A DNA stretch of 64,000 bases from the NCBI RefSeq assembly GCF_036588685.1, contig NW_026963314.1, forward strand, positions 2,356,001 through 2,420,000. The letters are read 5' to 3'. Under the pieces are notes generated by a model. That model saw only the letters and a program-made list of their open reading frames with translations. It was not told the origin of the DNA and did not search any database. Within the stretch, counting starts at the first letter, position 1. Every line of letters starts with the position of its first letter. Below, one piece after another: positions 18,978 to 64,000 of this stretch. The position numbers were made by a program, and so were the translations under genes. This DNA comes from Mytilus trossulus (lineage: Eukaryota).

Positions 18978-19726
18978 TAGAACATATAAATTACGCAACA
19001 TTAAAACGACACAAAACCTAAATACATCTATAAATGTATACATCTACAGATCATCATGGCACCCAGGGTCATTTTTTTCACTTTATAAATCAAACAAATA
19101 GAAGGAAAGTGTTCATTGTATTAAATTTATCTTTACCAAATGTTAATTTACATTTTCTAGTTCAAAGTTTCTGAATCTCATCAGTGTATGTGTATGTAAT
19201 AATCTTAGTGTTTGGTCCTTTAAAGAAACAATTAGTACTACTGGTGGCCGTTTGACAAGGGTACTATTCTGGTTCCCTTTTCGAGAGGCAGTTTAAATGC
19301 CCCTCCTTTCATTCTACCCACTTTGCAGAATCCACCTTTATGTTAACAATTTCTCAGGATTAATGTGTTTCTCGTCTTGAATGTATGCCTGAACTTCTAG
19401 TATAATTCAATAACTGGAACAACCACTTTTGTAAAAATAAAATTGAAAATGGAAATGGGAAATGTGTCAAAGAGACAACAACCCGATCATAGAAAACACA
19501 ACAGCAGAAGGTCACCAACAGATCTTCAATATTTGTTTGTGATCATACACAAGTAGGCAGAGCACGTTTAAAGACAATTTTCAAAGATTTATTTACATTT
19601 AACTGTCACAATAGATAGTGTACATTCAACGAGAATAATATAGTGTTTTTATAATGTCTCTGCTACCATCCCTTACGCATGAGCGGAGCTTAGGTCTCTG
19701 CTATCTTCCTTACGCATATGTCTCTG

Positions 19727-19983
19727 CTACCATCCCTTTCGCATGGGCGGAGCCGTCGATGCAGGGGGTCTCTGACCACCCCCACCTCCATGTAGAAGAG
19801 CTTGTTGAACTTTCATCCATGCAATATTCCTCTTTTTCATCAGTCTTTCTCTGTCAGTAATTAGATCTCGTCTAACATGGCATACGATTGCTAAAGCTAA
19901 AGCTCCAATAACTAAGGTAAATAATAGTACTGCATACGCTATAATATTGTATAGAATAAAACATTCCACTCCCCAACGGAAAC
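19727..19983 (-). CDS. LRR-TM gene B, exon 3 (TM + tail ending MRKGW*)
   Basis: tgtattgtag|gt acceptor, 257 nt; TM followed by CHVRR...KKRNIAWMKVQQAL...GQRPP. Confidence 0.9.
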
Positions 19984-20899
19984 CTACAATACACAATTTA
20001 GATTAATTGACATTAAATACATCTTATCGGGGGAAAACTGTGACATGAATAAAATTAAAGCAGTGATAAAGTTTGTAGGTGGAGGTCTTTGCTCTTCTAT
20101 ATACAAGTTGATTTAGTCTTGTAGTTTAACATCTCTCCTCGTTTTTCAATTATTTTTTTATTGTGAGTTGAGTATCTCATTGATGTTATACTTTGCACTT
20201 TTTACATATTTTATAATATGATTTAGACGAAACAATGTTTGGCTATACTAGTTTACGGCGTTTATATATGTTAAAAAAATCAATGACCACTTACTTAAAA
20301 AGAAAGAACAATTTGAAAGTTATATTTCTACACATTAATCCATGGAAACACCTGAAAAGTTCAAAATTCAGAATGTTGCTTTGAAGAAAAAGGAAAGGAA
20401 GTCAGCTTTTTCTTAATAACTAAATCTTCCTTAGTTTTGCCCTTCGTATTACTATGATCAGGGATTATAATATATTGACCTCTGCCGTCCTAGAGCAGTG
20501 GCTCGAAGTATATCTTTTCGCCTTCTGTAATTCTAAGATCAGGGATTTTAAGAGTTACCTTAAGTTTGCTCCTTGAATATGATGCACAAGGGTTCAACGT
20601 TTTAACAATGCCTTGGTTTTCCCGTTTGAATGGTTTTACACTAGTAATTTTGGGGCCCTTTATAGCTTGTTGTTCGGTGTGAGCCAAGGCTTGTTGTTCG
20701 GTGTGAGCCAAGGCTCCGTGTTGAAGGCCGTACTTTAACCTATAATGGTTTACTTTTTAAATTGTTATTTGGATTGAGAGTTGTCTCATTGGCACTCACA
20801 CCACATCTTCCTATATCTACTTACGTGTTCAAAAATTCGGGGATTTGAACTTTTACTTGTGTCCTCTGTGGAGCAAAGATAGGGGTTCAAACTTTTACG

Positions 20900-21700
20900 T
20901 GATACAAGAGTCGGGGATTTTGATGTTTACCTTTGCCCTCCGTGATACAAGTGCAAAAAATAACTGTATGAAGAGATTTAAGTCTTTACTTTTTCCTGCC
21001 CTCTCTGATACAGGGATCAGGAATTATGACTTTTACCTTTGCCCTACGTGATAAGGGATCAGGGATTAAGACTTTTACCTTTGCCCTCCGTGATAAGGGA
21101 TCAGGGAGTAAGACTTTTACCTTTGCCCTCCGTGATAAGGGATCAGGGATTAAGACTTTTACATTTGCCCTCCGTGATAAGGGATCAGAGATAAAGAAGT
21201 TAACCTTTGCCCACCGTGGAAAGGGATCAGGGATGAAGACTTTTACCTTTGCCCTCTGTGATACAAGGATCAGAGATAAAGACGTTTACCTTTGCCCACC
21301 GTGGAAAGGAATCAGGGATTAAGACTTTTACCTTTGCCCTCTGTATTACAAGGATCAGGGATTAAGACTTTTACCTTTGCCCTCTGTGATACAATGATCA
21401 GGGATAAAGACTTAATTGTGCCCTCTCTGATACAAGGATCAGGGATTAAGACGTTTACCTTTGCCCTCTGTGATACAGGGATCAAGAATTATGACTTTTA
21501 CCTTTGCCCTCCGTGATACAGGGATCAGGATTAAGACTTTTATCTTTGCCCTCTGTGATACACGGATCAGGATTAAGACGTTTATATTTGCCCTCCGTGA
21601 TACAGGGATCAGGGATTAAGACTTTTATGTTTGTCCATCGTAATAAGGGATCAGAGATTAAGACTTTTACCTTTGCCCTCCGTGATACAGGGATCAGGGA
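20900..21700 (-). repeat. 42-43 bp tandem array spanning the gene B exon 2 donor (~17-19 units)
   Basis: Minus-strand unit ccctgatccctgtatcacggagggcaaag|gtaaaagtcttaat; first unit is the real exon end. Confidence 0.9.
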
Positions 21701-21739
21701 TTTCACATTCTTTGATGTAGTATTCTTTTCCTGTCCTTT
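21671..21739 (-). CDS. LRR-TM gene B, exon 2 (KRTGKEYYIKECEIPDPCITEGK)
   Basis: ttgacag|aa ... aaag|gtaaaa, 69 nt, phase 1-1, two Cys. Confidence 0.85.
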
Positions 21740-22541
21740 CTGTCAATAGAAAACAATATACATTAACATATATAGTGTTACATATTTAGTCTTAGATGCA
21801 TGCTTGTTTATTAGTTTTAGTGGCTTTGAATTAGCTGTCAGTAACTGCGAGTACTGTCAGATCTGTTCTTAGTGTTTTGTTGTTGTTGGGATGTACAAGT
21901 ACCCGGCCACGTCCACTTGTATTAGTAGTATTTGTATTTTTATCCTTCTGATGAGTTTCTTAACTGATTTTTATAGTTCGTTCTTATGTTGTACTGTTAC
22001 ACGACTGTCCCAGGTTAAGGAAGGTTTGGGATCCCGCTAACATGTTTAACCCCGCCACATTCTGTATGTATGTGGCTGGCCCTAGTCAGGAGCCTTTAAT
22101 TCAGTGGTCACATACGTATGTGTTACATATTTGTTGTTCGTTCATTTTTTTGTACATGAATTAGGTCGTTATTTTCTCGTTTGAATTGTTTTACATTGTT
22201 ATGTCGGGGTCTTTTATAGCTGACTATGCGGTATGTGTTTTTTTCTCATTTACGAAGGCCATACGGTGACCTATGTATACTTGTGTCATTTGATCTCTTA
22301 TGGAGAACCTTCTCATTGGCAATCATACCACATCTTCTAATTGATATATATAATTACTTTGATTATTACAAATTATTCAATTCAAATTAATTTACATATT
22401 ATTCAATTCAAATTTATTTACAAAGTATTCAATTCAAATTAATTTACAAAATACAGTTAAATTGTTGTTGTTTGGTAGAGAGTTGTCTCATTTGCAATCA
22501 TACCACATCTTCATTTTTTTTTTATAAACAATTATATTTAC

Positions 22542-23421
22542 TTTCATACAGCGCTGGTGTGGTACATGTATATCCGGTCTCTATCTCGTATCCGCTTGCA
22601 TTCGCCGTATTGACGATCCAGATATTTTCACACGAACAATTCCATTCAGTTCCCATCAAGTTCACACTCAATAGTAGGTCAAGGCCATCGAAGATCGTGG
22701 AGGAAATCTCGGTAAATGCATTGTACTGTAGTGAAATCTTCTCTAGTAAAACATTCTGAGAAAAATCATCTGCCCTTACGACGGTTAGTCCGAGATTGTC
22801 CAGTACTACGCTAACTAAATTAGTCTGTGAGTACAATAGTCCTTGTGGTAAAGTTGTACTAGGTAACGTAACACCAATCATAGCTAGTTCTCCTTTCGGA
22901 TCTGGAACGGTGGTTAGCTTCTGTATATCGAGACCGGTAAAGGCGTCATTAGCCAGAGTGGTCAATGAGCCACCGTACACCAAGAAGTAATTGAGTGAAC
23001 CTATGGCTGAGAAGGCTGATGACGTAAACCCACTGCTGATGACACAGTTGATAATTGATAGTTCCTGGAGGTACGACATCCCGGTAAATGTTCCCGAGAA
23101 TAAAAGTAGGGTGCCACCTGTGGAGCAGCGTATTTCTAGAGACGCTGGATAATCGGGATCAAGTGTTCCCATTCCAGAAAAACCTGAAAAAGTCGATGTT
23201 GGGTTACTGGCAGGAAGTTGTCCATGAACATTATAAATCTGCATCCTTTGTGGGATCGGACTAGAGAAGGATGAATACGACAAAGGAAGAGAAACCGATA
23301 GATAATCACATTCGTATACCCCTCGGGCTGAACCATCTGTATCAACGTAAGTACATCCAGATTGTGCTGCGCCTTTCACCATCACAGCGCCACACAACAA
23401 TACCACGAACAACATCAACAT
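22542..23421 (-). CDS. LRR-TM gene B, exon 1 (signal peptide, Cys cap, LRRs, LRRCT); spliced product ~401 aa
   Basis: Hydrophobic N-terminus; LEKISLQYNAFTEI-type LRRs; WNCSCENIW LRRCT; donor gaa a|gtaaat; 880 nt. Confidence 0.92.
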
Positions 23422-25326: not shown

Positions 25327-26182
25327 ATGGCACTTCTTTTAACCATTCTGATGTTTTGTATCTACAATAGTGATGCAGCAACACCTACCGGATGTACAGG
25401 GGATAGTTCCGATAGCTCTATCATTCATTACACGTGCGACAAGACAAGTATCGGTGGATCTATCAGTTTCGCTGGATTCACAGATTCTGAGCCACAGAGG
25501 CTAACCATCTACAGCGCCAGTGGTACAGTTTCCGCGGGAACATTTAGCGGTTTCAGCGCATTTAGTGGTGTTAACTCTGATTACCCGGCTACCCTTCAGT
25601 TCCTATGTACAGGCTCACTTACGTTTTCTACAGGGACGTTCGGTGATCTCGGGTATTTTGAGGAGGTTTTTATCAAAGATTGTACTACTTCCTTGATTGC
25701 CAGTATGTTTAATAGTCTTGGAACGGCAAACAAAGTATCGATCAGTGGCGGAACACTTTCAACCATTGATGCTGGCACCTTCACAAGCCTCGACATCACA
25801 CCAATATCCACAACAGCAAGTCCAAGAGGAGAATTGAGCATCAAGAACGTAGTACTAACGCCAGGAACATTTCCCTCGACATTCTTTAATCCACTGACGA
25901 ATATTAAATTCATATATTTGGAGAATCTAGGCCTGACATCTGTTGATGCTGCGTGGTTCAGCAGTAACACAGCCCTCGTATATCTGTCTCTGGCTAACAA
26001 TCAGATCACAACACTCCCGAGTACTATGTTTGATACAACATTGGCGTTACTGTATATCAATTTACACGGGGCTCCTTTGGATTGTACAGATACTAGTACC
26101 ACTTGGTATTATGATTACACTGTAGCCAACAACATCACCTTTGACGGAGCAGCTGTCTGTTCCACTCCAGCTGCTGAACAAT
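25327..26182 (+). CDS. LRR-TM gene C, exon 1; spliced product ~380 aa
   Basis: Signal peptide, PTGC cap, LVYLSLANNQITTL LRR; donor caa t|gtaagt; 856 nt. Confidence 0.92.
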
Positions 26183-26826
26183 GTAAGTAATCACTTGGTA
26201 TTATGACTACGCTGTAGCCAATAACATCATTTTTGACGGAGCAGCTGTCTGGTCCACTCCAGCTGCTGAACAATGTACTAATCACTTGGTATTATGACTA
26301 CGCTGTAGCCAACAACATCACTTTTGACGGAGCAGCTGTCTGTTCAACTCCAGCTGCTGAACAATGTAAGTAATCACTTGGTATTATGACTACGCTGTAG
26401 CCAATAACATCACTTTTGACGGAGCAGCTGTCTGGTCCACTCCAGCTGCTGAACAATGTAAGTAATCACTTGGTATTATGACTACGCTGTAGCCAATAAC
26501 ATCACTTTTGACGGAGCAGCTGTCTGGTCCACTCCAGCTGCTGAACAATGTAAGTAATCACTTGGTATTATGACTACGCTGTAGCCAATAACATCACTTT
26601 TGACGGAGCAGCTGTCTGGTCCACTCCAGCTGCTGAACAATGTAAATTATCTCTTGGTATTATGACTATACTGTAGCCAATAACATCACTTTTGATGAAG
26701 CAGTTGTTTGTTTCACTCCGGCTGCTGAACAATGTAAGCTATCACTCTGTATTATGATTACACTGTAGCCAATAACATCACTTTTGTTGAAGCAGCTGTC
26801 ATTTCTAGCCTAAGTGTAAGTAATCA
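26100..26826 (+). repeat. 92-bp tandem array spanning the gene C exon 1 donor (~8 units)
   Basis: Unit starts at 26101, 26193, 26284, 26376, 26468, 26560, 26652, 26744. Confidence 0.95.
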
Positions 26827-27299: not shown

Positions 27300-27365
27300 A
27301 TAAAAGTTTAACAGTTTGGGCACAGGCGTTTGCAACATCAACTGATGCATGCAAAGGGGAAATGG
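27300..27365 (+). CDS. LRR-TM gene C, exon 2 (YKSLTVWAQAFATSTDACKGEM)
   Basis: cttccag|at ... atgg|gtaaga, 66 nt, phase 1-1, open frame. Confidence 0.8.
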
Positions 27366-29061: not shown

Positions 29062-29282
29062 GAATAGTAGTCGGCGGCTCTTGCATTGGTTTATTCCAGT
29101 TGATCTGTTACTGTGTGACATTTGTGTGTCTGATATTTGGTATCGTTGCCCTTATACTGGTAATATATCTACGTCGCAGTACATTGAGAGCGAAGCAAGA
29201 CAATGGAAGTAAGGGAAACCAAAGGCAAGAGAAGAGGAAAGGAGGAAGACGGGAGAAAAGAGATTCAAATGCATGGACTTAA
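29062..29282 (+). CDS. LRR-TM gene C, exon 3 (TM + basic tail ending NAWT*)
   Basis: gttttatag|ga acceptor, 221 nt; GIVVGGSC then TM, YLRR. Confidence 0.88.
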
Positions 29283-31706: not shown

Positions 31707-32583
31707 ATGAAAATTGTAGAAGTGTTTGTGTACTTATGGACAACGTACATCGGATATGTGTATAGTGCACAGCCTACCGGATGTACATACGACAGTACAG
31801 ATTCATCAACAGGTATCTATACGTGTACATTCGGCAGTTACACAGCACCACTTACCTTTACTGCGTTCACTGATCCGTATCCACAGCGTATAATTATCAA
31901 TGCTGTAAGCGGCACTTTACCAACAAATACTTTCTCAGGCTTTTCATCGTTTGCTGCTAATTTGATAGATCTTGATTATGCTGCAAGCTTACAGGTTATT
32001 TGTAGTTCTGGAGGAACACTGACAATTTCGCAAGCTTTATTTTCGAGCATGAGCTATCTACAGGAACTGAAAATAAGTAACTGTGATATTCAGTCGCTTC
32101 CTTCGAGTGTTTTCTCAAACTTAGTCACACTCGATTCTCTGTGGATTGAAGGAGGTTCAGTCAACACACTAGCAACTAATATTCTTACGGGTTTATCTAT
32201 AGAAAAATTGGACGTTCCAGTCCCGACCGGCGAATTTGTCATAAAGAACACTGTGGTTTCCGGTAATCAAATTCCGGTCGGTATGCTTGATGGACTGACT
32301 GCTGTTAAATCAATTAGATTCGACAACATCGGACTGACTTCGGTTGATGATGCGCTGTTCGGTCTGAATACAGCTTTGACGTCTTTGTCACTTGCTAACA
32401 ATGTTGGGATAATAAAGATAGAAACTGCTTTGATTAGCGCACTAGAGGGGTTATCTTCCCTTGATCTAGATGGTATCCCGTTTGAATGCACGTGCGAAAA
32501 CTTATGGATCCTCACTCATGCCACAATGAATGGTATAGCCTTACCATCAGGAATCATTTGCGGCACACCTGCTGAATATCAGA
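31707..32583 (+). CDS. LRR-TM gene D, exon 1; spliced product ~399 aa
   Basis: Signal peptide, PTGCTYD cap, LRRs, PFECTCENLW; donor cag a|gtacgt; 877 nt. Confidence 0.92.
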
Positions 32584-32699
32584 GTACGTATTTGTTATGA
32601 CAATCGTATTGATATACAATATAATAGTTTGATCATGTAGGTTGCACTTGTAAATGCTTCTGTTTCACAACCCACAAGACCCAAAGTGAAAGGAGGGGT

Positions 32700-33005
32700 A
32701 TATATAAAAAAGATTTGGTATGATTGCCAATGAGACAACTGTTCACAAGAGACCAAAATGACACAGACATTAATAACTATAGCTCACCGTACGGCCTTCA
32801 ACAATGAGCAAAGCCCATACCGACTAGTCAGCTATAAAAGGCCTCGATAAGACAATGTAAAACATTTCAAACGAGAAAACTAACGGCCTCATTTATATAA
32901 AAAAAAATGAACGAAAAACAAATATGTACCAAGTAACACATAAAAAACCGACAACCACTGAATTACAGGCTCTTGACTTGGGACAGGCACATACGTAAAT
33001 AATGT
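32700..33005 (+). mobile_element. Very abundant short interspersed repeat (ggtatgattgccaatgagacaact... family)
   Basis: Ten or more copies in both orientations, e.g. ~2690-2885, 10285-10445, 20620-20820, 22040-22340, 34495-34620, 44695-44962, 50105-50425, 51115-51325. Confidence 0.8.
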
Positions 33006-33309
33006 GATATGTAGTACATAATTTTAGTATAAATTAATGCCTTATTATTCGGAAGTTCGGGGCATATAAATGTTGAAAACTGCCACACAGCTTTTATTGC
33101 TGTACTTCATCTGAAAGTCAAAGTGATGCCTCCAAAACGGAACAAAATAAAAACTATCACCTTACTGCAAGGTAATACGGCCGCTACCGTTGGCTTTAAT
33201 ATATTTAATACTGGTTACATTGCCACAAAAAAAGTGCTTAACTCATTGCCAATTTAGTAAATAAGTTTTGTGATTCCTTAATAATTGACAAGGCTATATT
33301 TTTATTCAG

Positions 33310-33375
33310 ACAAGAAAGCTTCTAAGTATTATGATGAGATGTGTGACACTGCAAACGCGTGTGGAGATTTACCAG
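33310..33375 (+). CDS. LRR-TM gene D, exon 2 (NKKASKYYDEMCDTANACGDLP)
   Basis: tttattcag|ac ... ccag|gtgagt, 66 nt. Confidence 0.92.
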
Positions 33376-33769
33376 GTGAGTATAGGACGTTTGAATATAC
33401 AAAAGAAATAATCCAATTTCATAAGACGAAGAAATAACCAACGAACTCGTAGCTAGAAAAAAAAAAAAAAAAAAAGGCCCTACAAAATTCTACACAACTC
33501 TACATGAGAACTTCACGTAGACAACCAGAACACCAACAACATACCAAGGTTGATCTCAGATCGATTTAAACACGAATTTAAACCATAAACCATCTTCTGT
33601 TTAAAAAAAATGCATTTGTTCACGTTGGTCAAATTGCTTTATAAATTTGTTGACATTTGTTTGCAATCAGACCATATATTTTTTCCCATAAATACAAAGT
33701 GGAATACAACCTCACGGTGGTTAATCAAAATAAATAAAAAACATCAATCAACATACTTTTATATTTCAG

Positions 33770-34026
33770 GTATAACCCTTGGTCCAACGATATGTATGAC
33801 TATTATCGAGATTGTCAGTTATTGTATCCTAGCTGTTACCATGGTAATAGCTATAGTAGCACTTGTTATCATATGTTATGTCAGAAGGAAACTGGTCATT
33901 GCCAAAGAAAATCTAGAGAAAAAGAGAAATAGCTCCTGGGCACGTGTACAAAATGCACTGAAGAAGGGCGGAGCATCTGGTCAAAAACCACCATTGAGAT
34001 CGTCACAAGTAGATGGTTGGGTGTAA
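33770..34026 (+). CDS. LRR-TM gene D, exon 3 (TM + tail ending DGWV*)
   Basis: atttcag|gt acceptor, 257 nt; aataaa at ~34154. Confidence 0.92.
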
Positions 34027-39308: not shown

Positions 39309-39715
39309 GTATGTTTATTATTAAAAAAAAGAAATTTGTAAGTAATATCATTCAAGTGTTAACCTTACCTTTAAAAAAAACCCATAGTTTTTACGTAAAA
39401 AAAAAAAAAAAAAACTTGTGAGATAGTGAGGGAGTGTTAGCTGAAAAATATATTTTACTTTGAAATATCCTGTTATCTGTCTTGAAACTTACTCAGGTAG
39501 CCTAGAAATAGGGGGGGGGGGGACAAGCCTGAAATGAGTGTCATCAAAGTTTGTTCTGGGATAAATCAGATCTTTTTTCTCTCTATACGCGCACATATTT
39601 CAAATAAATATAAAATTTATTATAATTTAAAACATACACTGTTATTCGGAAAATCAGGATAGGTACAACAATATTTGAAGTTTTATATAAATGATTATGC
39701 TTGGTATTTTTGTAG

Positions 39716-44186: not shown

Positions 44187-44243
44187 ACAAGAAAGCGACA
44201 AAGTACTATGCAGATTCGTGTGATCTAAGTGTCAGCTGTGCAG
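44187..44243 (+). CDS. LRR-TM gene F, exon 2 (NKKATKYYADSCDLSVSCA)
   Basis: tattgtag|ac ... gcag|gtttgt, 57 nt. Confidence 0.92.
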
Positions 44244-45993: not shown

Positions 45994-46207
45994 GCTTGTT
46001 GGGAGTATTCTAAGCTTTGTTACCCTAGTGTTAGCGGCAATAGCACTGGTTATCATTTGCCACACCCGACGTCAGCTCATGGCAGCAACCTCTAACCTGG
46101 AAAAAAACAGGAACAGTGGATGGTCTAAAGCCAAGGAGGCTATGGATACAAATAGATCCATCAAACCTCCAATGAGAGGATCACAGGCAGTACATGGTTG
46201 GGGATGA
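45957..46207 (+). CDS. LRR-TM gene F, exon 3 (TM + tail ending HGWG*)
   Basis: Last acceptor of the array; DIAIGSTCMTVYELVG aligns with paralog D GITLGPTICMTIIEIVS; 251 nt. Confidence 0.88.
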
Positions 46208-52264: not shown

Positions 52265-53141
52265 ATGGGTCTACATTTGTGTTTTCTGTTTGTTATATAT
52301 GTTTTGTCATCAGTATCTGGGGACCCTACCGGTTGTTCATATGATGCATCGACAATTTTATTCACCTGTAACGCAAGAAGTTGGAGTTTGCCTCTTGTAT
52401 TTTCTGACTTTACAACTGCGCAGCCGCAAAGACTGATGCTGAAAGATGTTGATGGAGAAATCTCAGCAAGTGCACCAAATGGACCAGCATTTTCTGGATT
52501 CAGTAGTATTAACACTGCAACTTTTGACCCAGACTATGCGCCAGCCCTATATATCATGTGTTATTTCGGAGGGCAGTTAATTTTGGACAAAGACGCGTTT
52601 GCCGATTTCAGTTACGTTGAAGAAGTCAAAATCCTAAATTGTGATATTCTATCCATTCCAGTTGAAGCATTCTCTTACTTTGGAGATGTCAATCTATTCC
52701 ACATTCAAGGCGGATCCATTTCTAATATGGTGGCTGATAGTTTCAAAAATCTGAACGTAAATCGAATGACAACAGTACCGAATCCAAAGGGAGAGTTCGC
52801 AATTATTAACTCAGAGCTGACTTCCGGTGCATTGGCATTCGGAGCATTGTTTAATATGCCAAACATTGAACGTGTGCTGATTGAAAACGCTCACCTATCA
52901 ACAGTAACATCCGACATGTTCTATGCTTTATCAAAGTTAAATTATGCTTCCCTGAACTATAACACGTTTACAACCATCCCGAACAACATGTTTGCCAATG
53001 TCTTTGGCCTTGCCTCAGTAGATATGTATGGCATCAGCTGGGACTGTTCCTGTGACAACCTCTGGTTCTTAGACTATTTATCAGAGAACAATATCACTAT
53101 GAATGGCGACATAGTCTGTAGCACGCCTGTTGATTACGAAC
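52265..53141 (+). CDS. LRR-TM gene G, exon 1
   Basis: Signal peptide, PTGCSYD cap, LNYASLNYNTFTTI LRR, WDCSCDNLW; donor gaa c|gtaagt; 877 nt. Confidence 0.92.
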
Positions 53142-56100
53142 GTAAGTGATATTGTATGTAGAACTCCTGTACAAAACGTACGTAAGTGACATTGTCTATA
53201 GTACTTCTGTTGATTACGAACTAGGTGACATTTTTCTGAAGCACTACTATTGATAACAAACGTAAGTGACATGGTCTATAAGACTCCTGTTGATTACGAA
53301 CGTAAGTGTCGTTGTATGCAGCACTCCTGTTGATTACGAACGTAAGTGTCATTGTATGCAGCACTCCTGTTGATTACGAACGTAAGTGACATTGTATGTA
53401 GCACTCCTGTTGACTACGAACGTAAGTGACATTGTATGTAGCACTCCTGTTGATTACGAACGTTAGTGTCATTGTATGTAGCACTCCTGTTGACTACGAA
53501 CGTTAGTGACATTGTATGTAGCACTCCTGTTGATTACGAACGTAAGTGTCATTGTATGCAGCACTCCTGTTGACTACGAACGTAAGTGACATTGTATGTA
53601 GCACTCCTGTTGATTACGAACGTAAGTGTCATTGTATGTAGCACTCCTGTTGATTACGAACGTAAGTGTCATTGTATGTAGAACTCCTGTTGACTACGAA
53701 CGTAAGTGACATTGTATGTAGCACTCTTGATGATTACGAACGTGAGTGACATTGTATGTAGCACTCCTGTTGATTACGAACGTAAGTGTCATTGTATGCA
53801 GCACTCCTGTTGATTACGAACGTTAGTGTCATTGTATGTAGCACTCCTGTTGACTACGAATGTTAGTGACATTGTATGTAGTACTCTTGTTGATTACGAA
53901 CGTAAGTGTCATTGTATGTAGCACTCATGTTGATTACGAACGTAAGTGTCATTGTATGTAGCACTCCTGTTGATTACGAACGTAAGTGTCATTGTATGTA
54001 GCACTCCTGTTGATTACGAACGTAAGTGACATTGTATATAGCACTCCTGTTGACTACGAACGTAAGTGACATTGTCGGTAGAACTCCTGTTGACTACGAA
54101 CGTGAGTGACATTGTATGTAGCACTCCTGTTGATTACGAACGTAAGTGTCATTGTATGTATCACTCCTGTTGATTACGAACGTAAGTGACATTGTATATA
54201 GCACTCCTGTTGACTACGAACGTAAGTGACATTGTCGGTAGAACTCCTGTTGACTACGAACGTGAGTGACATTGTATGTAGCACTCCTGTTGATTACGAA
54301 CGTAAGTGTCATTGTATGTAGCACTCCTGTTGATTACGAACGTAAGTGACATTGTATGTAGCACTCTTGATGATTACGAACGTAAGTGACATTGTATGTA
54401 GCACTCCTGTTGACTACGAACGTAAGTGACATTGTATGTAGCACTCCTGTTGATTACGAACGTAAGTGTCATTGTATGTAGCACTCCTGTTGATTACGAA
54501 CGTAAGTGACATTGTATGTAGCACTCTTGATGATTACGAACGTAAGTGACATTGTATGTAGCACTCCTGTTGATTACGAACGTAAGTGTCATTGTATGTA
54601 GCACTCCTGTTGATTACGAACGTAAGTGTCATTGTATGTAGCACTCTTGATGATTACGAACGTAAGTGACATTGTATGTAGCACTCCTGTTGACTACGAA
54701 CGTAAGTGACATTGTATGTAGCACTCCTGTTGATTACGAACGTAAGTGACATTGTATATAGCACTCCTGTTTACTACGAACGTAAGTGTCATTGTATGTA
54801 GCACTCCTGTTGATTACGAACGTAAGTGACATTGTATATAGCACTCCTGTTGATTACGAACGTAAGTGACATTGTATGTAGCACTCTTGATGATTACGAA
54901 CGTAAGTGTTATTGTATGTAGCACTCCTGTTGATTACGAACGTAAGTGACATTGTATATAGCACTCCTGTTGACTACGAACGTAAGTGACATTGTCGGTA
55001 GAACTCCGGTTGACTACGAACGTGAGTGACATTGTATGTAGCACTCCTGTTGATTACGAACGTAAGTGTCATTGTATGTAGCACTCTTGATGATTACGAA
55101 CGTAAGTGACATTGTATGTAGAACTCATGTTGACTACGAACGTAAGTGACATTGTATGTAGAACTCCTGTTGACTACGAACGTAAGTGACATTGTATGTA
55201 GCACTCTTGATGATTACGAACGTGAGTGACATTGTATGTAGCACTCCTGTTGATTACGAACGTAAGTGACATTGTATGTAGCACTCTTGATGATTACGAA
55301 CGTTAGTGACATTGTATGTAGCACTCCTGTTGATTACGAACGTAAGTGACATTGTATGTAGCACTCCTGTTGATTACGAACGTTAGTGACATTGTCGGTA
55401 GAACTCCTGTTGACTACGAACGTAAGTGACATTATATGTAGCACTCTTGATGATTACGAACGTAAGTGACATTGTATGTAGAACTCATGTTGACTACGAA
55501 CGTAAGTGACATTGTATGTAGAACTCCTGTTGACTACGAACGTAAGTGACATTGTATGTAGCACTCTTGATGATTACGAACGTGAGTGACATTGTATGTA
55601 GAACTCCTGTTGATTACGAACGTAATTGTCATTGTATGTAGCACTCCTGTTGATTACGAACGTAAGTGACATTGTATGTAGCACTCTTGATGATTACGAA
55701 CGTTAGTGACATTGTATGTAGAACTCATGTTGACTACGAACGTAAGTGACATTGTATGTAGAACTCCTGTTGATTACGAACGTGAGTGACATTGTATGTA
55801 GAACTCCTGTTGACTACGAACGTAAGTGACATTGTATGTAGCACTCCTGTTGATTACGAACGTAAGTGACATTGTATGTAGAACTCCTGTTGACTACGAA
55901 CGTAAGTGACATTGTATGTAGCACTCCTGTTGATTACGAACGTAAGTGTTATTGTATGTAGAACTCCTGTTGACTACGAACGTAAGTGACATTGTATGTA
56001 GAACTCCTGTTGATTACGAACGTAAGTGACATTGTATGTAGAACTCCTGTTGACTACGAACGTAAGTGACATTATATGTAGCACTCCTGTTGATTACGAA

Positions 56101-59100
56101 CGTAAGTGTCATTGTATGTATCACTCCTGTTGACTACGAACGTAAGTGTCATTGTATGCAGCACTCCTGTTGACTACGAACGTAAGTGACATTGTATGTA
56201 GCACTCCTGTTGATTACAAACGTAAGTGACATTGTATGCAGCACTCCTGTTGACTACGAACGTAAGTGACATTGTATGCAGCACTCCTGTTGACTACGAA
56301 CGTAAGTGACATTGTTTGTAGAACTCCTGTTGATTACGATCGTGAGTGTCATTGTATGTAGCACTCCTGTTGATTACGAACGTAAGTGTCATTGTATGTA
56401 GCACTCCTGTTGATTACGAACGTAAGTGACATTGTATGTAGCACTCTTGATGATTACGAACGTGAGTGACATTGTATGTAGAACTCCTGTTGATTACGAA
56501 CGTAAGTGACATTGTATGTAGAACTCCTGTTGACTACGAACGTAAGTGACATTGTATGTAGCACTCTTGATGATTACGAACGGGAGTGACATTGTATGTA
56601 GCACTCCTGTTGATTACGAATGTAAGTGACATTGTATGTAGCACTCTTGATGATTACGAACGTTAGTGACATTGTATGTAGCACTCCTGTTGATTACGAA
56701 CGTAAGTGACATTGTATGTAGCACTCCTGTTGATTACGAACGTTAGTGACATTGTCGGTAGAACTCCTGTTGACTACGAACGTAAGTGACATTGTATGTA
56801 GCACTCTTGATGATTACGAACGTAAGTGACATTGTATGTAGAACTCCTGTTGACTACGAACGTAAGTGACATTGTATGTAGCACTCCTGTTGATTACGAA
56901 CGTAAGTGTTATTGTATGTAGAACTCCTGTTGACCACGAACGTAAGTGACATTGTATGTAGAACTCCTGTTGATTACGAACGTAAGTGACATTGTATGTA
57001 GAACTCCTGTTGACTACGAACGTAAGTGACATTATATGTAGCACTCCTGTTGATTACGAACGTAAGTGACATTGTATGTAGAACTCCTGTTGACTACGAA
57101 CGTAAGTGACATTGTATGTAGCACTCCTGTTGATTACGAACGTAAGTGTCATTGTATGTAGCACTCCTGCTGATTACGAACGTAAGTGTCATTGTATGCA
57201 GCACTCCTGTTGACTACGAACGTAAGTGACATTGTATGTAGCACTCCTGTTGATTACGAACGTAAGTGACATTGTATGCAGCACTCCTGTTGACTACGAA
57301 CGTAAGTGACATTGTATGCAGCACTCCTGTTGACTACGAACGTAAGTGACATTGTTTGTAGAACTCCTGTTGATAACGATCGTGAGTGTCATTGTATGTA
57401 GCACTCCTGTTGATTACGAACGTAAGTGTCATTGTATGTAGCACTCCTGTTGATTACGAACGTAAGTGACATTGTATGCAGCACTCCTGTTGATTACGAA
57501 CGTAAGTGTCATTGTATGTAGCACTCCTGTTGACTACGAACGTAAGTGACATTGTATGTAGCACTCCTGTTGATTACGAACGTAAGTGTTATTGTATGTA
57601 GAACTCCTGTTGACTACGAACGTAAGTGACATTGTATGTAGAACTCCTGTTGATTACGAACGTAAGTGACATTGTATGTAGAACTCCTGTTGACTACGAA
57701 CGTAAGTGACATTATATGTAGCACTCCTGTTGATTACGAACGTAAGTGTCATTGTATGTAGCACTCCTGCTGATTACGAACGTAAGTGTCATTGTATGCA
57801 GCACTCCTGTTGACTACGAACGTAAGTGACATTGTATGTAGCACTCCTGTTGATTACGAACGTAAGTGACATTGTATGCAGCACTCCTGTTGACTACGAA
57901 CGTAAGTGACATTGTATGCAGCACTCCTGTTGACTACGAACGTAAGTGACATTGTTTGTAGAACTCCTGTTGATTACGATCGTGAGTGTCATTGTATGTA
58001 GCACTCCTGTTGATTACGAACGTAAGTGTCATTGTATGTAGCACTCCTGTTGATTACGAACGTAAGTGACATTGTATGTAGCACTCTTGATGATTACGAA
58101 CGTGAGTGACATTGTATGTAGAACTCCTGTTGATTACGAACGTAAGTGACATTGTATGTAGAACTCCTGTTGACTACGAACGTAAGTGACATTGTATGTA
58201 GCACTCTTGATGATTACGAACGTGAGTGACATTGTATGTAGCACTCCTGTTGATTACGAACGTAAGTGACATTGTATGTAGCACTCTTGATGATTACGAA
58301 CGTTAGTGACATTGTATGTAGCACTCCTGTTGATTACGAACGTAAGTGACATTGTATGTAGCACTCCTGTTGATTACGAACGTTAGTGACATTGTCGGTA
58401 GAACTCCTGTTGACTACGAACGTAAGTGACATTGTATGTAGCACTCTTGATTATTACGAACGTAAGTGACATTGTATGTAGAACTCCTGTTGACTACGAA
58501 CGTAAGTGACATTGTATGTAGCACTCCTGTTGATTACGAACGTAAGTGTTATTGTATGTAGAACTCCTGTTGACCACGAACGTAAGTGACATTGTATGTA
58601 GAACTCCCGTTGATTACGAACGTAAGTGACATTGTATGTAGAACTCCTGTTGACTACGAACGTAAGTGACATTATATGTAGCACTCCTGTTGATTACGAA
58701 CGTAAGTGACATTGTATGTAGAACTCCTGTTGACTACGAACGTAAGTGACATTGTATGTAGCACTCCTGTTGATTACGAACGTAAGTGTCATTGTATGTA
58801 GCACTCCTGCTGATTACGAACGTAAGTGTCATTGTATGCAGCACTCCTGTTGACTACGAACGTAAGTGACATTGTATGTAGCACTCCTGTTGATTACGAA
58901 CGTAAGTGACATTGTATGCAGCACTCCTGTTGACTACGAACGTAAGTGACATTGTATGCAGCACTCCTGTTGACTACGAACGTAAGTGACATTGTTTGTA
59001 GAACTCCTGTTGATTACGATCGTGAGTGTCATTGTATGTAGCACTCCTGTTGATTACGAACGTAAGTGTCATTGTATGTAGCACTCCTGTTGATTACGAA

Positions 59101-62100
59101 CGTAAGTGACATTGTATGCAGCATTCCTGTTGATTACGAACGTAAGTGTCATTGTATGTAGCACTCCTGTTGACTACGAACGTAAGTGACATTGTATGTA
59201 GCACTCCTGTTGATTACGAACGTAAGTGTCATTGTATGTAGCACTCCTGTTGATTACGAACGTAAGTGACATTGTATATAGCACTCCTGTTGACTACGAA
59301 CGTAAGTGACATTGTCGGTGGAACTCCGGTTGACTACGAACGTGAGTGACATTGTATGTAGCACTCCTGTTGATTACGAACGTAAGTGACATTGTATATA
59401 GCACTCCTGTTTACTACGAACGTAAGTGTCATTGTATGTAGCACTCCTGTTGATTACGAACGTAATTGTCATTGTATGTAGCACTCCTGTTGATTACGAA
59501 CGTAAGTGACATTGTATGTAGAACTCCTGTTGACTACGAACGTAAGTGACATTGTATGCAGCACTCCTGTTGACTACGAACGTAAGTGACATTGTTTGTA
59601 GAACTCCTGTTGATTACGATCGTGAGTGTCATTGTATGTAGCACTCCTGTTGATTACGAACGTAAGTGTCATTGTATGTAGCACTCCTGTTGATTACGAA
59701 CGTAAGTGACATTGTATGTAGCACTCTTGATGATTACGAACGTGAGTGACATTGTATGTAGAACTCCTGTTGATTACGAACGTAAGTGACATTGTATGTA
59801 GAACTCCTGTTGACTACGAACGTAAGTGACATTGTATGTAGCACTCTTGATGATTACGAACGTGAGTGACATTGTATGTAGCACTCCTGTTGATTACGAA
59901 CGTAAGTGACATTGTATGTAGCACTCTTGATGATTACGAACGTTAGTGACATTGTATGTAGCACTCCTGTTGATTACGAACGTAAGTGACATTGTATGTA
60001 GCACTCCTGTTGATTACGAACGTTAGTGACATTGTCGGTAGAACTCCTGTTGACTACGAACGTAAGTGACATTGTATGTAGCACTCTTGATTATTACGAA
60101 CGTAAGTGACATTGTATGTAGAACTCCTGTTGACTACGAACGTAAGTGACATTGTATGTAGCACTCCTGTTGATTACGAACGTAAGTGTTATTGTATGTA
60201 GAACTCCTGTTGACCACGAACGTAAGTGACATTGTATGTAGAACTCCCGTTGATTACGAACGTAAGTGACATTGTATGTAGAACTCCTGTTGACTACGAA
60301 CGTAAGTGACATTATATGTAGCACTCCTGTTGATTACGAACGTAAGTGACATTGTATGTAGAACTCCTGTTGACTACGAACGTAAGTGACATTGTATGTA
60401 GCACTCCTGTTGATTACGAACGTAAGTGTCATTGTATGTAGCACTCCTGCTGATTACGAACGTAAGTGTCATTGTATGCAGCACTCCTGTTGACTACGAA
60501 CGTAAGTGACATTGTATGTAGCACTCCTGTTGATTACGAACGTAAGTGACATTGTATGCAGCACTCCTGTTGACTACGAACGTAAGTGACATTGTATGCA
60601 GCACTCCTGTTGACTACGAACGTAAGTGACATTGTTTGTAGAACTCCTGTTGATTACGATCGTGAGTGTCATTGTATGTAGCACTCCTGTTGATTACGAA
60701 CGTAAGTGTCATTGTATGTAGCACTCCTGTTGATTACGAACGTAAGTGACATTGTATGCAGCATTCCTGTTGATTACGAACGTAAGTGTCATTGTATGTA
60801 GCACTCCTGTTGACTACGAACGTAAGTGACATTGTATGTAGCACTCCTGTTGATTACGAACGTAAGTGTCATTGTATGTAGCACTCCTGTTGATTACGAA
60901 CGTAAGTGACATTGTATATAGCACTCCTGTTGACTACGAACGTAAGTGACATTGTCGGTGGAACTCCGGTTGACTACGAACGTGAGTGACATTGTATGTA
61001 GCACTCCTGTTGATTACGAACGTAAGTGACATTGTATATAGCACTCCTGTTTACTACGAACGTAAGTGTCATTGTATGTAGCACTCCTGTTGATTACGAA
61101 CGTAAGTGACATTGTATATAGCACTCCTGTTTACTACGAACGTAAGTGTCATTGTATGTAGCACTCCTGTTGATTACGAACGTAAGTGACATTGTATATA
61201 GAACTCCTGTTGACTACGAACGTAAGTGACATTGTATGTAGCACTCTTGATGATTACGAACGTGAGTGACATTGTATGTAGAACTCATGTTGACTACGAA
61301 CGTAAGTGACATTGTATGTAGAACTCCTGTTGATTACGAACGTGAGTGACATTGTATGTAGAACTCCTGTTGATTACGAACGTAATTGTCATTGTATGTA
61401 GCACTCCTGTTGATTACGAACGTAAGTGACATTGTATGTAGAACTCCTGTTGACTACGAACGTAAGTGACATTGTATGTAGCACTCTTGATGATTACGAA
61501 CGTGAGTGACATTGTATGTAGAACTCATGTTGACTACGAACGTAAGTGACATTGTATGTAGAACTCCTGTTGATTACGAACGTGAGTGACATTGTATGTA
61601 GAACTCCTGTTGATTACGAACGTAATTGTCATTGTATGTAGCACTCCTGTTGATTACGAACGTAAGTGACATTGTATGTAGAACTCCTGTTGACTACGAA
61701 CGTAAGTGACATTGTATGTAGCACTCCTGTTGATTACGAACGTAAGTGTTATTGTATGTAGCACTCTTGATGATTACGAACGTAAGTGACATTGTATGTA
61801 GAACTCTTGTTGACTACGAACGTAAGTGACATTGCATGTAGCACTCCTGTTGATTACGAACGTAAGTGTCATTGTATGTAGCACTCCTGTTGATTACGAA
61901 CGTAAGTGACATTGTATGTAGCACTCCTGTTGATTACGAACGTAAGTGTCATTGTATGCAGCACTCCTGTTGACTACGAACGTAAGTGACATTGTATGTA
62001 GCACTCCTGTTGATTACGAACGTAAGTGACATTGTATGCAGCACTCCTGTTGACTACGAACGTAAGTGACATTGTATGCAGCACTCCTGTTGACTACGAA

Positions 62101-62571
62101 CGTAAGTGACATTGTTTGTAGAACTCCTGTTGATTACGATCGTGAGTGTCATTGTATGCAGCACTCCTGTTGATTACGAACGTAAGTGTCATTGTATGTA
62201 GCACTCCTGTTGACTACGAACGTAAGTGACATTGTATGTAGCACTCCTGTTGATTACGAACGTAAGTGTCATTGTATGTAGCACTCCTGTTGACTACGAA
62301 CGTAAGTGACATTGTATGCAGCACTCCTGTTGATTACGAACGTAAGTGACATTGTATGTAGCACTCTTGATGATTACGAACGTAAGTGTCATTGTATGCA
62401 GCACTCCTGTTGACTACGAACGTAAGTGACATTGTATGTAGCACTCCTGTTGATTACGAACGTAAGTGTCATTGTATGTAGCACTCCTGTTGATTACGAA
62501 CGTAAGTGTCATTGTATGTAGCACTCCTGTTGATTACGAACGTAAGTGACATTGTTAGTAGCACTCCTGTT
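53108..62571 (+). repeat. 40-bp satellite (~236 units) spanning the gene G exon 1 donor
   Basis: Unit gacattgtatgtagcactcctgttgattacgaac|gtaagt; register kept from 53141 to 62541 (235 x 40). Confidence 0.97.
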
Positions 62572-62869
62572 ATTTACTTAAGTATGTTTTCAAAGTTGTT
62601 TTGGTACTTTCTTGTATTTTACGGCTAAGTATGTGTTGAACCATACATTTGATTTTAAGCACACATTAGAGAAAAAATGGATCTATATTCAACAAGGAAA
62701 TAATTTACCTTAACGCATATTGATATAGATACACATTATCAATCTGATAATACATTATGGTCAGCACACGGGTCTTACTTGACGCAGTAATCATGAGTAA
62801 TACGGTATTGTGCATGTACATACATAGCCACTGTTGATAAAATATGTCATCGCTACTTTTCTCTTTCAG

Positions 62870-62935
62870 ATAAACGTGCCACAAAATACAACTTGGACAC
62901 GTGTGTGACAGATGGGGTGTGTGGTAAAATAACAG
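62870..62935 (+). CDS. LRR-TM gene G, exon 2 (HKRATKYNLDTCVTDGVCGKIT)
   Basis: ctctttcag|at ... acag|gtaaag, 66 nt, phase 1-1. Confidence 0.92.
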
Positions 62936-63396
62936 GTAAAGTCTATGGGTTCTATAAATTTTAATACAAGCAGATTTAAGGTATATACCAATAGTACAAA
63001 AACCCAACAACAAAATGACATAACTAGGTCAAAATATTCTAAAACAGTGCTTGCAAGACTAAAAACTAGTTAAGAACTATTTCAACGAAGCAAGAAAACA
63101 GGATGAAAGATTAAAAAAGACATCAGTCTCTTAAACAGATGTAAGCAGCCAAAAAAAACAGACAAAATATAAGTAAAAACGATTGGACATGACAATAATG
63201 TTGATGATAAAACAGAAGCTAATCCACGATTTGATTTTGATTGATTGGGTCGGGTCTCGTAGATATCTATATTCTAACAAAATCATCGCAGAAATTTTAC
63301 CTTCCAGTTACTTTTGCTGAATCTTTTAGGTGGAAGGCGCCAGGTGTGCTCCCGTCTGAATAAATGTTTGTATAATTATATTCAATAACGTGGAAC

Positions 63397-64000
63397 TATG
63401 TCGGTACTTGCAATATATTGTTTTCTACAAACACTCAGATACATTTTGTTTTTACTAGGTATTGCTATTGGTAGTATGTCGGTACTTGTAATATATTGTT
63501 TTCTACAAACTCTCAGATACATTTTGTTTTTTTATACTAGGTATTGCTATTGGTAGTATGTCGGTACTTGTAATATATTGTTTTCTACAAACACTCAGAT
63601 ACATTTTGTTTTTACTAGGTATTGCTATTGGTAGTATGTCGGTACTTGTAATATATTGTTTTCTACAAACTCTCAGATACATTTTGTTTTTTTATACTAG
63701 GTATTGCTATAGCTAGTATGTCGGTACTTGTAATATATTGTTTTCTACAAACTCTCAGATACATTTTGTTCTTTAATACTAGGTATTGCTATAGCTAGTA
63801 TGTCGGTACTTGTAATATATCGTTTTCTACAAACTCTCAGATACATTTTGTTTTTACTAGGTATTGCTATTGGTAGTATGTCGGTACTTGTAATATATTG
63901 TTTTCTACAAACTCTCAGATACATTTTGTTTTTTTATACTAGGTATTGCTATTGGTAGTATGTCGGTACTTGTAATATATTGTTTTCTACAAACACTCAG
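63397..64000 (+). repeat. 78/82-bp tandem array spanning the probable gene G exon 3 acceptor; runs off window end
   Basis: ttttgtttttactag|gtattgctattggtagt encodes GIAIGS (cf. F DIAIGS); copies start at 63459, 63541, 63619, 63701, 63783, 63861, 63943. Confidence 0.85.

What the first reader, a model, noticed from the sequence alone, without database searches (positions are those of the whole stretch)
19657..64000. Recurrent, independent tandem amplification of splice junctions across an LRR receptor cluster
Seen: five arrays in four of the paralogs have a unit made of the host gene's own exon end plus adjacent intron. They are the B exon 2 donor (42-43 bp), C exon 1 donor (92 bp), F exon 3 acceptor (60 bp), G exon 1 donor (40 bp) and probable G exon 3 acceptor (78/82 bp). 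The units are unrelated in length and each carries gene-specific coding sequence, so they arose separately after the paralogs diverged. The homologous site is the first unit in donor arrays and the last in the F acceptor array (presumably also in G), so the full receptor stays encodable. All sit at the boundaries separating ectodomain from membrane anchor, and most extra sites lead to a nearby stop. Inference: either a junction-biased duplication process, or a copy-number-tunable splicing switch between membrane, secreted and stalk-extended LRR proteins. Caveat: these genes have only four coding junctions each, all near the anchor, and the genome is minisatellite-rich.
Basis: partly seen in the sequence, partly recalled or inferred. 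Interest (0 to 1): 0.9.

Follow-up and report, generated by a model that had tools for sequence, protein, structure and literature searches.

The report
Splice-junction minisatellites in mussel LRR genes
In a mussel cluster of leucine-rich-repeat receptor genes, six introns are filled with tandem copies of the gene's own exon edge plus splice site; this repeat type is already known as a "mirage" minisatellite, and where RNA could be checked the cell splices only at the genuine copy, so no splicing switch is shown.

Summary
All five arrays are tandem copies of the host gene's exon end plus adjoining intron. They are B exon 2 donor, C exon 1 donor, F exon 3 acceptor, G exon 1 donor (about 236 copies) and G exon 3 acceptor (60 copies, running 4.1 kb past the window). 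A sixth lies just upstream of the window, at the gene A exon 1 donor.

The genome is a Mytilus, closest to M. edulis. The 11-gene cluster is assembled twice, on C39 and C12. Every array sits at the same junction in both copies, with different copy numbers, so these are not assembly artefacts.

Each donor unit matches only its own gene. Junction overlap exceeds random placement (P about 6e-4 to 3e-3, post hoc).

The functional reading is not supported. Transcript contigs from four runs join gene F only at the last acceptor, and annotated proteins for B and G use the exon-adjacent sites.

The kind is known: "mirage" minisatellites of amphioxus and the human F7 intron 7 repeat. This scan has already reported many such arrays elsewhere in this genome, and I verified one in symplekin. 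I class it as a new member of a known kind, unusually large and dense, with the junction bias still unexplained.

The parts
15459..15922 (+). Gene A exon 3 (transmembrane segment plus tail). Gene A exon 1 and its 40-bp x 31 donor array lie upstream of the window, at window-equivalent -9158 to -7042.
   Evidence: tblastn and acceptor reading. The array and junction were read in L018.
19727..19983 (-). Gene B exon 3 (transmembrane segment plus tail, including the stop codon)
   Evidence: Sequence. Identical to the tail of orthologue P0010.
20997..21702 (-). Gene B exon 2 donor array, 42/43 bp x 16.7. The first unit is the true exon 2 end (21671) plus its donor. About 11 units keep a GTAAA(A/C)GT donor. 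Degenerate copies continue towards 20460.
   Evidence: The C12 copy has 21.7 units.
21671..21739 (-). Gene B exon 2 (69 nt, two-cysteine stalk)
   Evidence: The peptide matches P0010 exactly across both junctions.
22542..23421 (-). Gene B exon 1 (signal peptide, LRR ectodomain, LRRCT)
   Evidence: (LRR_8)
25327..26182 (+). Gene C exon 1
26100..26800 (+). Gene C exon 1 donor array, 92 bp x 7.6. The unit is the last 83 nt of exon 1 plus 9 nt of intron. Four of the six decoy units keep a GTAAG donor (three of them GTAAGT, identical to the true site); the other two read GTACTA and GTAAAT.
   Evidence: The C12 copy has 3.1 + 5.6 units, split by a MITE.
27300..27365 (+). Gene C exon 2
   Evidence: AG/GT flanks; the frame continues
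29062..29282 (+). Gene C exon 3
31707..34026 (+). Gene D, an array-free paralogue. Exons 31707-32583, 33310-33375 and 33770-34026.
   Evidence: Orthologue P0001 confirms both junctions. No array found.
38459..40415 (+). Gene E, an array-free paralogue. Exon 1 ends at 39308, exon 2 is 39716-39772 and exon 3 is 40184-40415. The exon 1 start is approximate.
41858..42734 (+). Gene F exon 1 (the start codon is approximate)
   Evidence: Covered by transcript contigs.
44187..44243 (+). Gene F exon 2 (57 nt)
   Evidence: Joints 42734>44187 and 44243>45957 appear in all four runs.
44972..45992 (+). Gene F exon 3 acceptor array, 60 bp x 17.1, with a 418-bp higher-order period. The last unit carries the acceptor that is used, with exon 3 starting at 45957.
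   Evidence: The C12 copy has about 36 units.
45957..46207 (+). Gene F exon 3
52265..53141 (+). Gene G exon 1
   Evidence: 98% identical to the M. edulis protein P0012.
53108..62571 (+). Gene G exon 1 donor array, 40 bp x about 236. Of 235 decoy units, 191 carry GTAAGT and 25 carry GTGAGT. The edge units are degenerate.
   Evidence: The C12 copy has about 78 units behind a 330-bp insertion.
62870..62935 (+). Gene G exon 2
   Evidence: The peptide is present in P0012.
63397..64000 (+). Start of the gene G exon 3 acceptor array. The whole array runs to window-equivalent 68138 (78 bp x 60, with some 82-bp units). The true exon 3 is at 68121-68422, beyond the window.
   Evidence: The C12 copy has 20 units.

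Best explanation
These are junction-spanning ("mirage"-type) minisatellites.

Origin (inferred). In each case a short tandem duplication of 40-92 bp happened to include an exon edge and its splice site. It then expanded by unequal exchange or slippage, often in multi-unit blocks.

Why they persist. The arrays are tolerated because the spliceosome uses the copy that abuts the real exon. That is the first donor or the last acceptor, so every other copy is simply intron and the full receptor is still made. Use of the edge copy is shown for F by transcript contigs. It is indicated for B and G by annotated proteins. It is inferred for A and C.

What they are not. They are not a feature of this receptor family. 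The same thing occurs in unrelated genes of this mussel genome.

What remains unexplained. The arrays sit on junctions more often than random placement predicts. This points to a junction-biased birth or retention process, whose mechanism is unknown.
For: - Anatomy of all six arrays, with the genuine site at the edge.
- Host-specific units.
- Both assembled copies of the cluster (C39 and C12, 88-98% identical outside repeats) carry every array at the same junction. Copy numbers differ: A 31 vs at least 38, B 16.7 vs 21.7, C 7.6 vs 8.7, F 17 vs about 36, G 236 vs 78 and 60 vs 20. One copy also has transposon insertions inside its arrays.
- Higher-order periods (418, 127, 160/242 bp) and degenerate edge units are typical of minisatellite turnover.
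- F transcripts in four runs use only the canonical joints.
- Proteins P0010 (B) and P0012 (G) use the canonical junctions.
- In G, the donor hexamers are neither more nor less conserved than the rest of the unit: 0.965 vs 0.947.
- The same array type occurs at a symplekin exon.
- Published precedents: amphioxus mirages that do not disturb splicing (PMC3087553, PMC3902484), and the human F7 intron 7 repeat, where the most upstream donor is chosen by 5'-3' scanning (PMC1557585).
Against: - Junction overlap is well above the neutral expectation, so plain random duplication does not fully explain where the arrays sit.
- RNA evidence exists for gene F only, and only as assembled contigs, which hide minor isoforms.
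- For donor arrays, forms spliced at decoys carry early stops and could be removed by nonsense-mediated decay (NMD) before they are seen.
- P0011 (294 aa, from run assemblies) equals G exon 1 read through its donor. It could be a retained-intron transcript or merely genomic DNA.
- That C39 and C12 are haplotypes rather than a segmental duplication is inferred, not shown.
Confidence: 0.75

Rival explanations
1. The arrays are a copy-number-tunable splicing device. Decoy donors and acceptors are used at meaningful rates. This would yield anchorless secreted ectodomains (A, C, G), stalk-only forms (B) or receptors with extra 20- or 26-residue modules (F, G). Alternatively, it would throttle productive mRNA through nonsense-mediated decay (NMD).
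For: - Most decoys are intact and identical to the true site.
- The F and G acceptor units are 60 and 78 bp, both multiples of three, with open frames through 3 and about 41 extra units.
- All arrays sit between the ectodomain and the membrane anchor.
- One run shows trace depth (1.98) in the last F units.
Against: - Four runs show only the canonical F joints and no depth in the array.
- Annotated B and G proteins are canonical.
- The same arrays occur in housekeeping genes such as symplekin, where such a switch makes no sense.
- The G units are open on both strands, so open frames come cheaply.
- Splice signals in G units are no better conserved than other positions.
- The extra G modules are hydrophobic and would add membrane-like segments rather than a stalk.
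Confidence: 0.08
2. The junction overlap is coincidence. In a minisatellite-rich genome with short introns, some arrays will cover junctions. This window was noticed only because several did.
For: - The region is dense in arrays, including intergenic ones of 38, 58, 25 and 50 bp.
- Ancestral introns were short, 400-730 nt in D and E.
- The test is post hoc, on a window picked for looking odd.
Against: - P is 6e-4 to 3e-3 even with generous nulls, and that is before adding gene A.
- All six intragenic arrays longer than 500 bp are junction arrays.
- The pattern recurs in symplekin. By unverified notes of this scan, it recurs in dozens of other genes.
Confidence: 0.08
3. The arrays are assembly artefacts, such as collapsed or inflated repeats.
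For: Exact copy numbers of 9.4-kb and 4.7-kb arrays depend on long-read assembly and were not checked against raw reads.
Against: - Two separately assembled copies carry all the arrays, with distinct variants, copy numbers and private transposon insertions.
- The unique flanks are joined correctly in transcripts.
Confidence: 0.02

Closest known systems
"Mirage" minisatellites of amphioxus (Adh3, troponin C, globins BflGb6/9, PGBD5). Read here in PMC3087553 and PMC3902484, which cite the original Adh3 report.
   Same: - Tandem repeats whose unit spans an exon-intron boundary, at either 5' or 3' boundaries.
- Most units keep the AG/GT signals.
- Regular splicing is undisturbed.
- Copy number differs between haplotypes.
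- Inner units are homogenised and edge units are not.
- The mechanism of origin is stated as unclear.
   Different: - A different phylum (bivalve mollusc).
- Far larger arrays: up to about 236 and 60 copies in one gene, against 2-6 in the globins.
- Six arrays across five paralogues of one cluster.
- Apparently very frequent across the genome.
Human F7 intron 7 37-bp repeat (PMC1557585)
   Same: - The first repeat element spans the exon-intron boundary.
- The authentic donor is followed by identical pseudo-donors that stay silent.
- The most upstream site is chosen.
   Different: - F7 has only a handful of copies.
- Silence of the pseudo-sites was shown there by minigene mutagenesis. Here it is only inferred for the donor arrays, from annotated proteins.
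- Acceptor arrays, where the last copy is used, are not part of the F7 model.
Internal gene duplication as a source of new introns and alternative sites (the Rogers model and later surveys, as cited in PMC3087553)
   Same: A duplication that includes a splice signal leaves the outer site in use and turns the duplicate into intron.
   Different: Those cases are mostly single duplications. Here the duplicates have expanded into satellites of kilobase size, and no new intron or exon has been created.
Single-pass LRR ectodomain receptors. Database names for relatives include 'LRRCT domain-containing protein', 'LRRC4C-like' and 'platelet glycoprotein V-like'.
   Same: Signal peptide, LRRNT-like cysteines, LRR_8 repeats, LRRCT, short stalk, one transmembrane segment and a short basic tail.
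   Different: These are uncharacterised bivalve proteins. No function or ligand is known, and the database names are automatic.

Membership tests
Mirage (junction-spanning) minisatellite | The repeat unit contains an exon edge plus the adjoining intron | tested here: met
   All six arrays. Exon/intron parts: A 23+17, B 32+10/11, C 83+9, G donor 34+6, F about 33+27, G acceptor about 18+60.
Mirage (junction-spanning) minisatellite | Many, not necessarily all, units keep the GT or AG splice signal | tested here: met
   G: 216 of 235 units carry GTRAGT. C: 4 of 6 decoy units keep GTAAG. B: about 11 of 16. A: 27 GTAAGT. F and G acceptor units keep the pyrimidine tract plus AG.
Mirage (junction-spanning) minisatellite | Regular splicing uses the authentic edge copy | tested here: met
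   F: transcript contigs in 4 runs. B and G: annotated orthologue or conspecific proteins. A and C were not tested.
Mirage (junction-spanning) minisatellite | Length instability between haplotypes | tested here: met
   Every array differs in copy number between C39 and C12. That these are haplotypes is inferred from colinearity and 88-98% identity.
Mirage (junction-spanning) minisatellite | Concerted evolution inside the array, with edge units excluded | tested here: inconclusive
   The G edge units are visibly degenerate and inner units are 92-95% alike. Higher-order periods are present. No unit tree was built.
F7-type silent pseudo-donor array | Pseudo-donors identical to the authentic donor remain unused | tested here: inconclusive
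   Identity of the sites is shown. Silence is only implied by canonical annotated proteins.
Regulated membrane/secreted alternative-splicing switch | Alternative isoforms using the extra sites are present in RNA | tested here: not met
   There are no joints to any upstream F acceptor and no depth across nearly all of the array (one run has trace depth, 1.98, in its last units) in four runs. Rare forms are not excluded, and the other genes were not tested.
Recursive-splice (ratchet) sites | An acceptor is immediately followed by a functional donor, which is regenerated after the first splice | not tested
   G acceptor units read AG|GTATTG, a weak donor lacking G at +5. F units read AG|ATATAG, which is not a donor. 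The true G exon 3 keeps these letters in the protein.
LRR single-pass receptor | LRR repeats with capping cysteines, followed by one transmembrane segment | tested here: met
   Pfam LRR_8 is above its cut-off in 5 of the 6 exon-1 products tested; F reaches only 20.4 bits against a cut-off of 27. A hydrophobic segment plus basic stop-transfer residues lie in exon 3.

The most novel reading that the evidence does not exclude
Mussels may have a genome-wide mutational process that seeds minisatellites specifically at splice junctions. One candidate is break repair or template switching coupled to transcription or splicing at the 5' and 3' splice sites. If so, arrays such as those of gene G (236 decoy donors and 60 decoy acceptors, with threefold copy-number differences between haplotypes) could measurably lower productive splicing. 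That would make copy number a heritable dial on receptor dosage.
Probability: 0.2. Interest if true: 0.8.

Novelty: new member of a known kind. Interest (0 to 1): 0.5.

Why it matters
- **Splice-site choice.** Gene G is an extreme natural test. One genuine donor is followed by about 216 equally good copies, and one genuine acceptor is preceded by 59 copies, yet the annotated protein is canonical.
- **Origin of mirages.** The excess of arrays on junctions, seen in many unrelated genes of this genome, revives the question left open since the amphioxus reports: how do these repeats arise? A minisatellite-rich genome with two haplotypes in hand makes the question testable.
- **Annotation.** Long open frames run through the acceptor arrays (1177 aa in G). 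Stops follow immediately after the first donors. Both can mislead gene predictors.
- **Markers.** The arrays are hypervariable markers inside a likely immune-type receptor cluster.

Tried and rejected
- **More genome DNA.** As a result the exon 3 regions of I, J and K, the whole of A', and small gaps in C' and F' were not read. An unbiased baseline sample of junctions could not be taken either: myosin-head exons were located but not fetched.
- **Kinase-domain loci as a baseline**. These were unsuitable because the best hits are intron-poor genes and macro-satellites. In 49 kb, none of the four arrays with at least 3 copies lay next to an open-frame end, but the sample is too small to use.
- **Same 40-bp period in A and G.** I considered a shared ancient array. 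I rejected it because the units align only with their own exon ends and periods of 38-43 bp are common here.
- **GC-rich units as the cause of the bias.** Donor units have exon-like GC (43-47%), but acceptor units have intron-like GC (29-33%).
- **Selection for or against decoy donors in G.** There is no difference in conservation. My unit walker lost register on the C12 array and on the acceptor array, so those profiles were discarded.
- **Intron part of donor units.** It is short in all five donor arrays, about 2-17 nt. A rough hand-computed Fisher combination (not a tool result, and made with earlier estimates of 14 nt for A and 4 nt for symplekin) gave P near 0.06, so this is a lead only.
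- **Joined spliced coding sequence.** Exons were searched one by one, by reference.

Full report
**Source and genes**

The window is G000:C39:2356001-2420000 of a 1.3-Gb genome. Exon-1 products are 98% identical to a Mytilus edulis protein and 94% identical to a M. galloprovincialis protein. The genome is therefore a Mytilus, closest to M. edulis.

The window holds paralogues B to G of a family of single-pass LRR receptors, plus exon 3 of gene A. Each gene has three coding exons:
- Exon 1 encodes the signal peptide, the LRR ectodomain and the LRRCT. Pfam LRR_8 is above its cut-off in five of the six exon-1 products tested; F reaches only 20.4 bits against a cut-off of 27.
- Exon 2 is 57-69 nt and encodes a two-cysteine stalk.
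- Exon 3 encodes the transmembrane segment and a short tail.

All junctions are phase 1. I read them from the sequence. They are confirmed by full-length proteins: P0001 for D, P0010 for B and P0012 for G. Exons were searched one at a time, by reference.

**The observation**

Tandem Repeats Finder reports the five arrays at the stated places.

| Array | Window position | Unit and copies | Exon part + intron part |
|---|---|---|---|
| B exon 2 donor | 20997-21702 (minus strand) | 42/43 bp x 16.7 | 32 + 10-11 nt |
| C exon 1 donor | 26100-26800 | 92 bp x 7.6 | 83 + 9 nt |
| F exon 3 acceptor | 44972-45992 | 60 bp x 17.1 | 31-36 + 24-29 nt |
| G exon 1 donor | 53108-62571 | 40 bp x about 236 | 34 + 6 nt |
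| G exon 3 acceptor | 63397 to 68138 (window-equivalent) | 78 bp x 60, some 82-bp units | about 18 + about 60 nt |

- By fetching the next 10 kb I found that the second G array has 60 copies and ends in the true exon 3 at window-equivalent 68121.
- The genuine site is the first unit of each donor array and the last unit of each acceptor array.
- Reading through a first donor meets a stop within a few codons in A, B, C and G.
- The F and G acceptor units are multiples of three. Three extra units in F and about 41 in G are in frame. G is open on the opposite strand as well, so open frames are cheap in such repeats.
- Most decoys are intact. In G, 191 of 235 decoy units carry GTAAGT and 25 carry GTGAGT. 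In C, three decoy donors are identical to the true one.

**Extension beyond the window**

A search of the whole genome with G exon 1 found exactly 22 matches. They form an 11-gene cluster, A to K, present twice: on C39 and at C12:59.23-59.35 Mb. Gene order is the same in both, and gene B is inverted.

Outside repeats the two copies are 88-98% identical, and exon-3 proteins are 97-100% identical. C39 is a 2.7-Mb contig and C12 is chromosome-sized. I take C39 to be the alternative haplotype. A recent segmental duplication is not excluded.

Gene A lies just upstream of the window. It carries a sixth array, 40 bp x 31, made of its own last 23 exon nt plus 17 intron nt.

Every array is present at the same junction in both copies, with different copy numbers:

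| Array | C39 | C12 |
|---|---|---|
| A donor | 31 | at least 38 |
| B donor | 16.7 | 21.7 |
| C donor | 7.6 | 3.1 + 5.6 |
| F acceptor | 17 | about 36 |
| G donor | about 236 | about 78 |
| G acceptor | 60 | 20 |

- The C12 array of gene C is split by a MITE with 24-bp inverted ends.
- The C12 array of gene G is separated from its exon by a 330-bp SINE-like insertion.
- These private differences rule out an assembly artefact. They also show that the arrays predate the split of the two copies and have been unstable since.
- D, E and H have no array. I, J and K have none at the junctions I could see.
- By junction type, the tally on C39 is: exon 1 donor 3 of 11, exon 2 acceptor 0 of 9, exon 2 donor 1 of 9, exon 3 acceptor 2 of 8.

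**Independence of the arrays**

The A, C and G donor units align only with their own gene's exon end. Scores are 34-64 against the host and 6-22 against any other paralogue. The shared 40-bp period of A and G is most simply a coincidence, because periods of 38-43 bp are common in this region.

**More than chance?**

Within genes B to H, eight arrays have at least three copies, and five of them cover a junction. I gave each array the chance that a seed of its unit length covers one of the four junctions.
- With present intron lengths minus arrays, and exon interiors forbidden, P(at least 5 of 8) = 6.5e-4.
- With introns capped at the short D-like length, P = 3e-3.
- Without selection against exonic seeds, P = 6e-5.

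All six intragenic arrays longer than 500 bp, counting A, are junction arrays. The test is post hoc and small, but it agrees with what is seen elsewhere in the genome.

**Is the extra sites' use visible in RNA?**

I had one run search and one lay-reads call, and I spent both on gene F. F is the only in-window case where extra sites could lengthen the protein.

Four runs were laid, from three coded organisms and three studies. They are flagged 'RNA?' by the tool and are shown to be RNA by their spliced contigs. Each holds an F transcript contig that joins 42734 to 44187 and 44243 to 45957, GT..AG in both cases. No joint to an upstream acceptor was listed. Depth is zero across the array, apart from a trace (1.98) in one run near its end.

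So the last acceptor is the one used. Contigs drop rare forms, so minor use is not excluded.

For donor arrays I have only annotation:
- The RefSeq-style M. californianus protein P0010 uses B's first-unit donor.
- The M. edulis protein P0012 joins G exon 1, exon 2 and exon 3 across both giant arrays.
- P0011 equals G exon 1 read through its donor. Its contig may be DNA, so it is uninformative.

**What it is**

The literature search found this repeat type under a name. [quoted passage not shown] They occur at either boundary, vary between haplotypes, have homogenised interiors and divergent edges, and do not disturb splicing. The authors call the generating mechanism unclear.

The human F7 intron 7 repeat is the donor-side counterpart. 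There, identical pseudo-donors stay silent and the most upstream site wins by 5'-3' scanning.

The arrays here meet each defining feature that I could test. I found no report from bivalves in the searchable library.

**Not special to this family**

Notes of this scan list the same thing in many unrelated genes of this genome, including symplekin, DROSHA, PHGDH, MPRIP, TRAPPC1, a myosin and a multi-EGF receptor. Several follow-ups reached the mirage reading. Those notes are leads, not evidence.

I checked one myself. The symplekin exon at C3:91859096-91859350 is followed by 10.7 copies of a 37-bp unit made of its own last 35 nt or so plus GT.

A device peculiar to LRR receptors is therefore unlikely. 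A genome-wide tendency is likely.

**Mechanism**

Shown:
- The arrays exist, are unstable, are host-derived and lie on junctions.
- F is spliced at the genuine copy.

Inferred:
- Each array began as a short tandem duplication. Two to four nt of microhomology can be read at several unit boundaries.
- Each array grew by unequal exchange in blocks, which would explain the higher-order periods of 418, 127 and 160/242 bp.
- The arrays persist because edge-site choice makes them intronic.

Unexplained:
- Why junctions are favoured. Unit GC content does not explain it, and splice signals inside G units show no sign of selection.
- The intron part of donor units is short in all five donor arrays. A rough hand-computed Fisher combination, not a tool result, gave P near 0.06. 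This hints at a breakpoint near the 5' splice site but is not significant.
- Acceptor arrays using the last rather than the first copy argues for definition of the real exon by its downstream sequence, not simple first-come choice. That is inference.

**Limits**

- Copy numbers of the longest arrays rest on the assembly.

**Verdict**

The splicing-switch half is not. The find is a new, very large and dense member of a known kind, and this scan has already met it repeatedly elsewhere in this genome.

Noticed in passing
G000:C1:26.000-26.029 Mb; C3:16.309-16.365 Mb; C4:20.129-20.150 Mb: Three macro-satellites with periods of about 1.71 kb and 1.89 kb. Each unit carries a protein-kinase-domain exon (profile positions 43-257), mostly with open frames, in about 11 to more than 30 copies.
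   Followed up: no
G000:C3:91859314-91859692 (loci L070-L072): A symplekin N-terminal-domain exon is followed by 10.7 copies of a 37-bp unit made of its own last 35 nt or so plus GT. This is the same junction-array phenomenon in an unrelated housekeeping gene.
   Followed up: partly
G000:C12:59253046-59253260 (L027): A 215-bp MITE with 24-bp terminal inverted repeats and a TA target duplication is inserted inside the 92-bp donor array of the C12 copy of gene C. It is absent from the window copy.
   Followed up: partly
G000:C12:59290142-59290470 (L006/L008): A SINE-like insertion of about 330 bp separates the true exon 1 donor of the C12 copy of gene G from its decoy array.
   Followed up: partly
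window 19727-23421 versus C12:59241078-59244715: Gene B is inverted between the two assembled copies of the cluster. The A-B and B-C spacings also differ by more than 10 kb.
   Followed up: partly
window 4-1345 (+) and 4374-9874 (-): Two oppositely oriented blocks of a satellite of about 119 bp with a 21-bp sub-repeat. They lie between gene A exon 1 (upstream of the window) and gene A exon 3 (15459-15922). If those exons belong together, this is a 24-kb intron.
   Followed up: no
window 47008-48497; L005 1554-1677 and 5266-5389: An intergenic 38-bp minisatellite has 39 copies on C39 but 3.3 on C12. On C12 the surrounding segment of about 3.7 kb is itself duplicated in tandem.
   Followed up: no
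window-equivalent 81584-83605 (L016) and 105537-106300 (L013): Large minisatellites lie just upstream of genes I (25 bp x 81) and K (50 bp x 15). The array upstream of I has 29 copies on C12.
   Followed up: no
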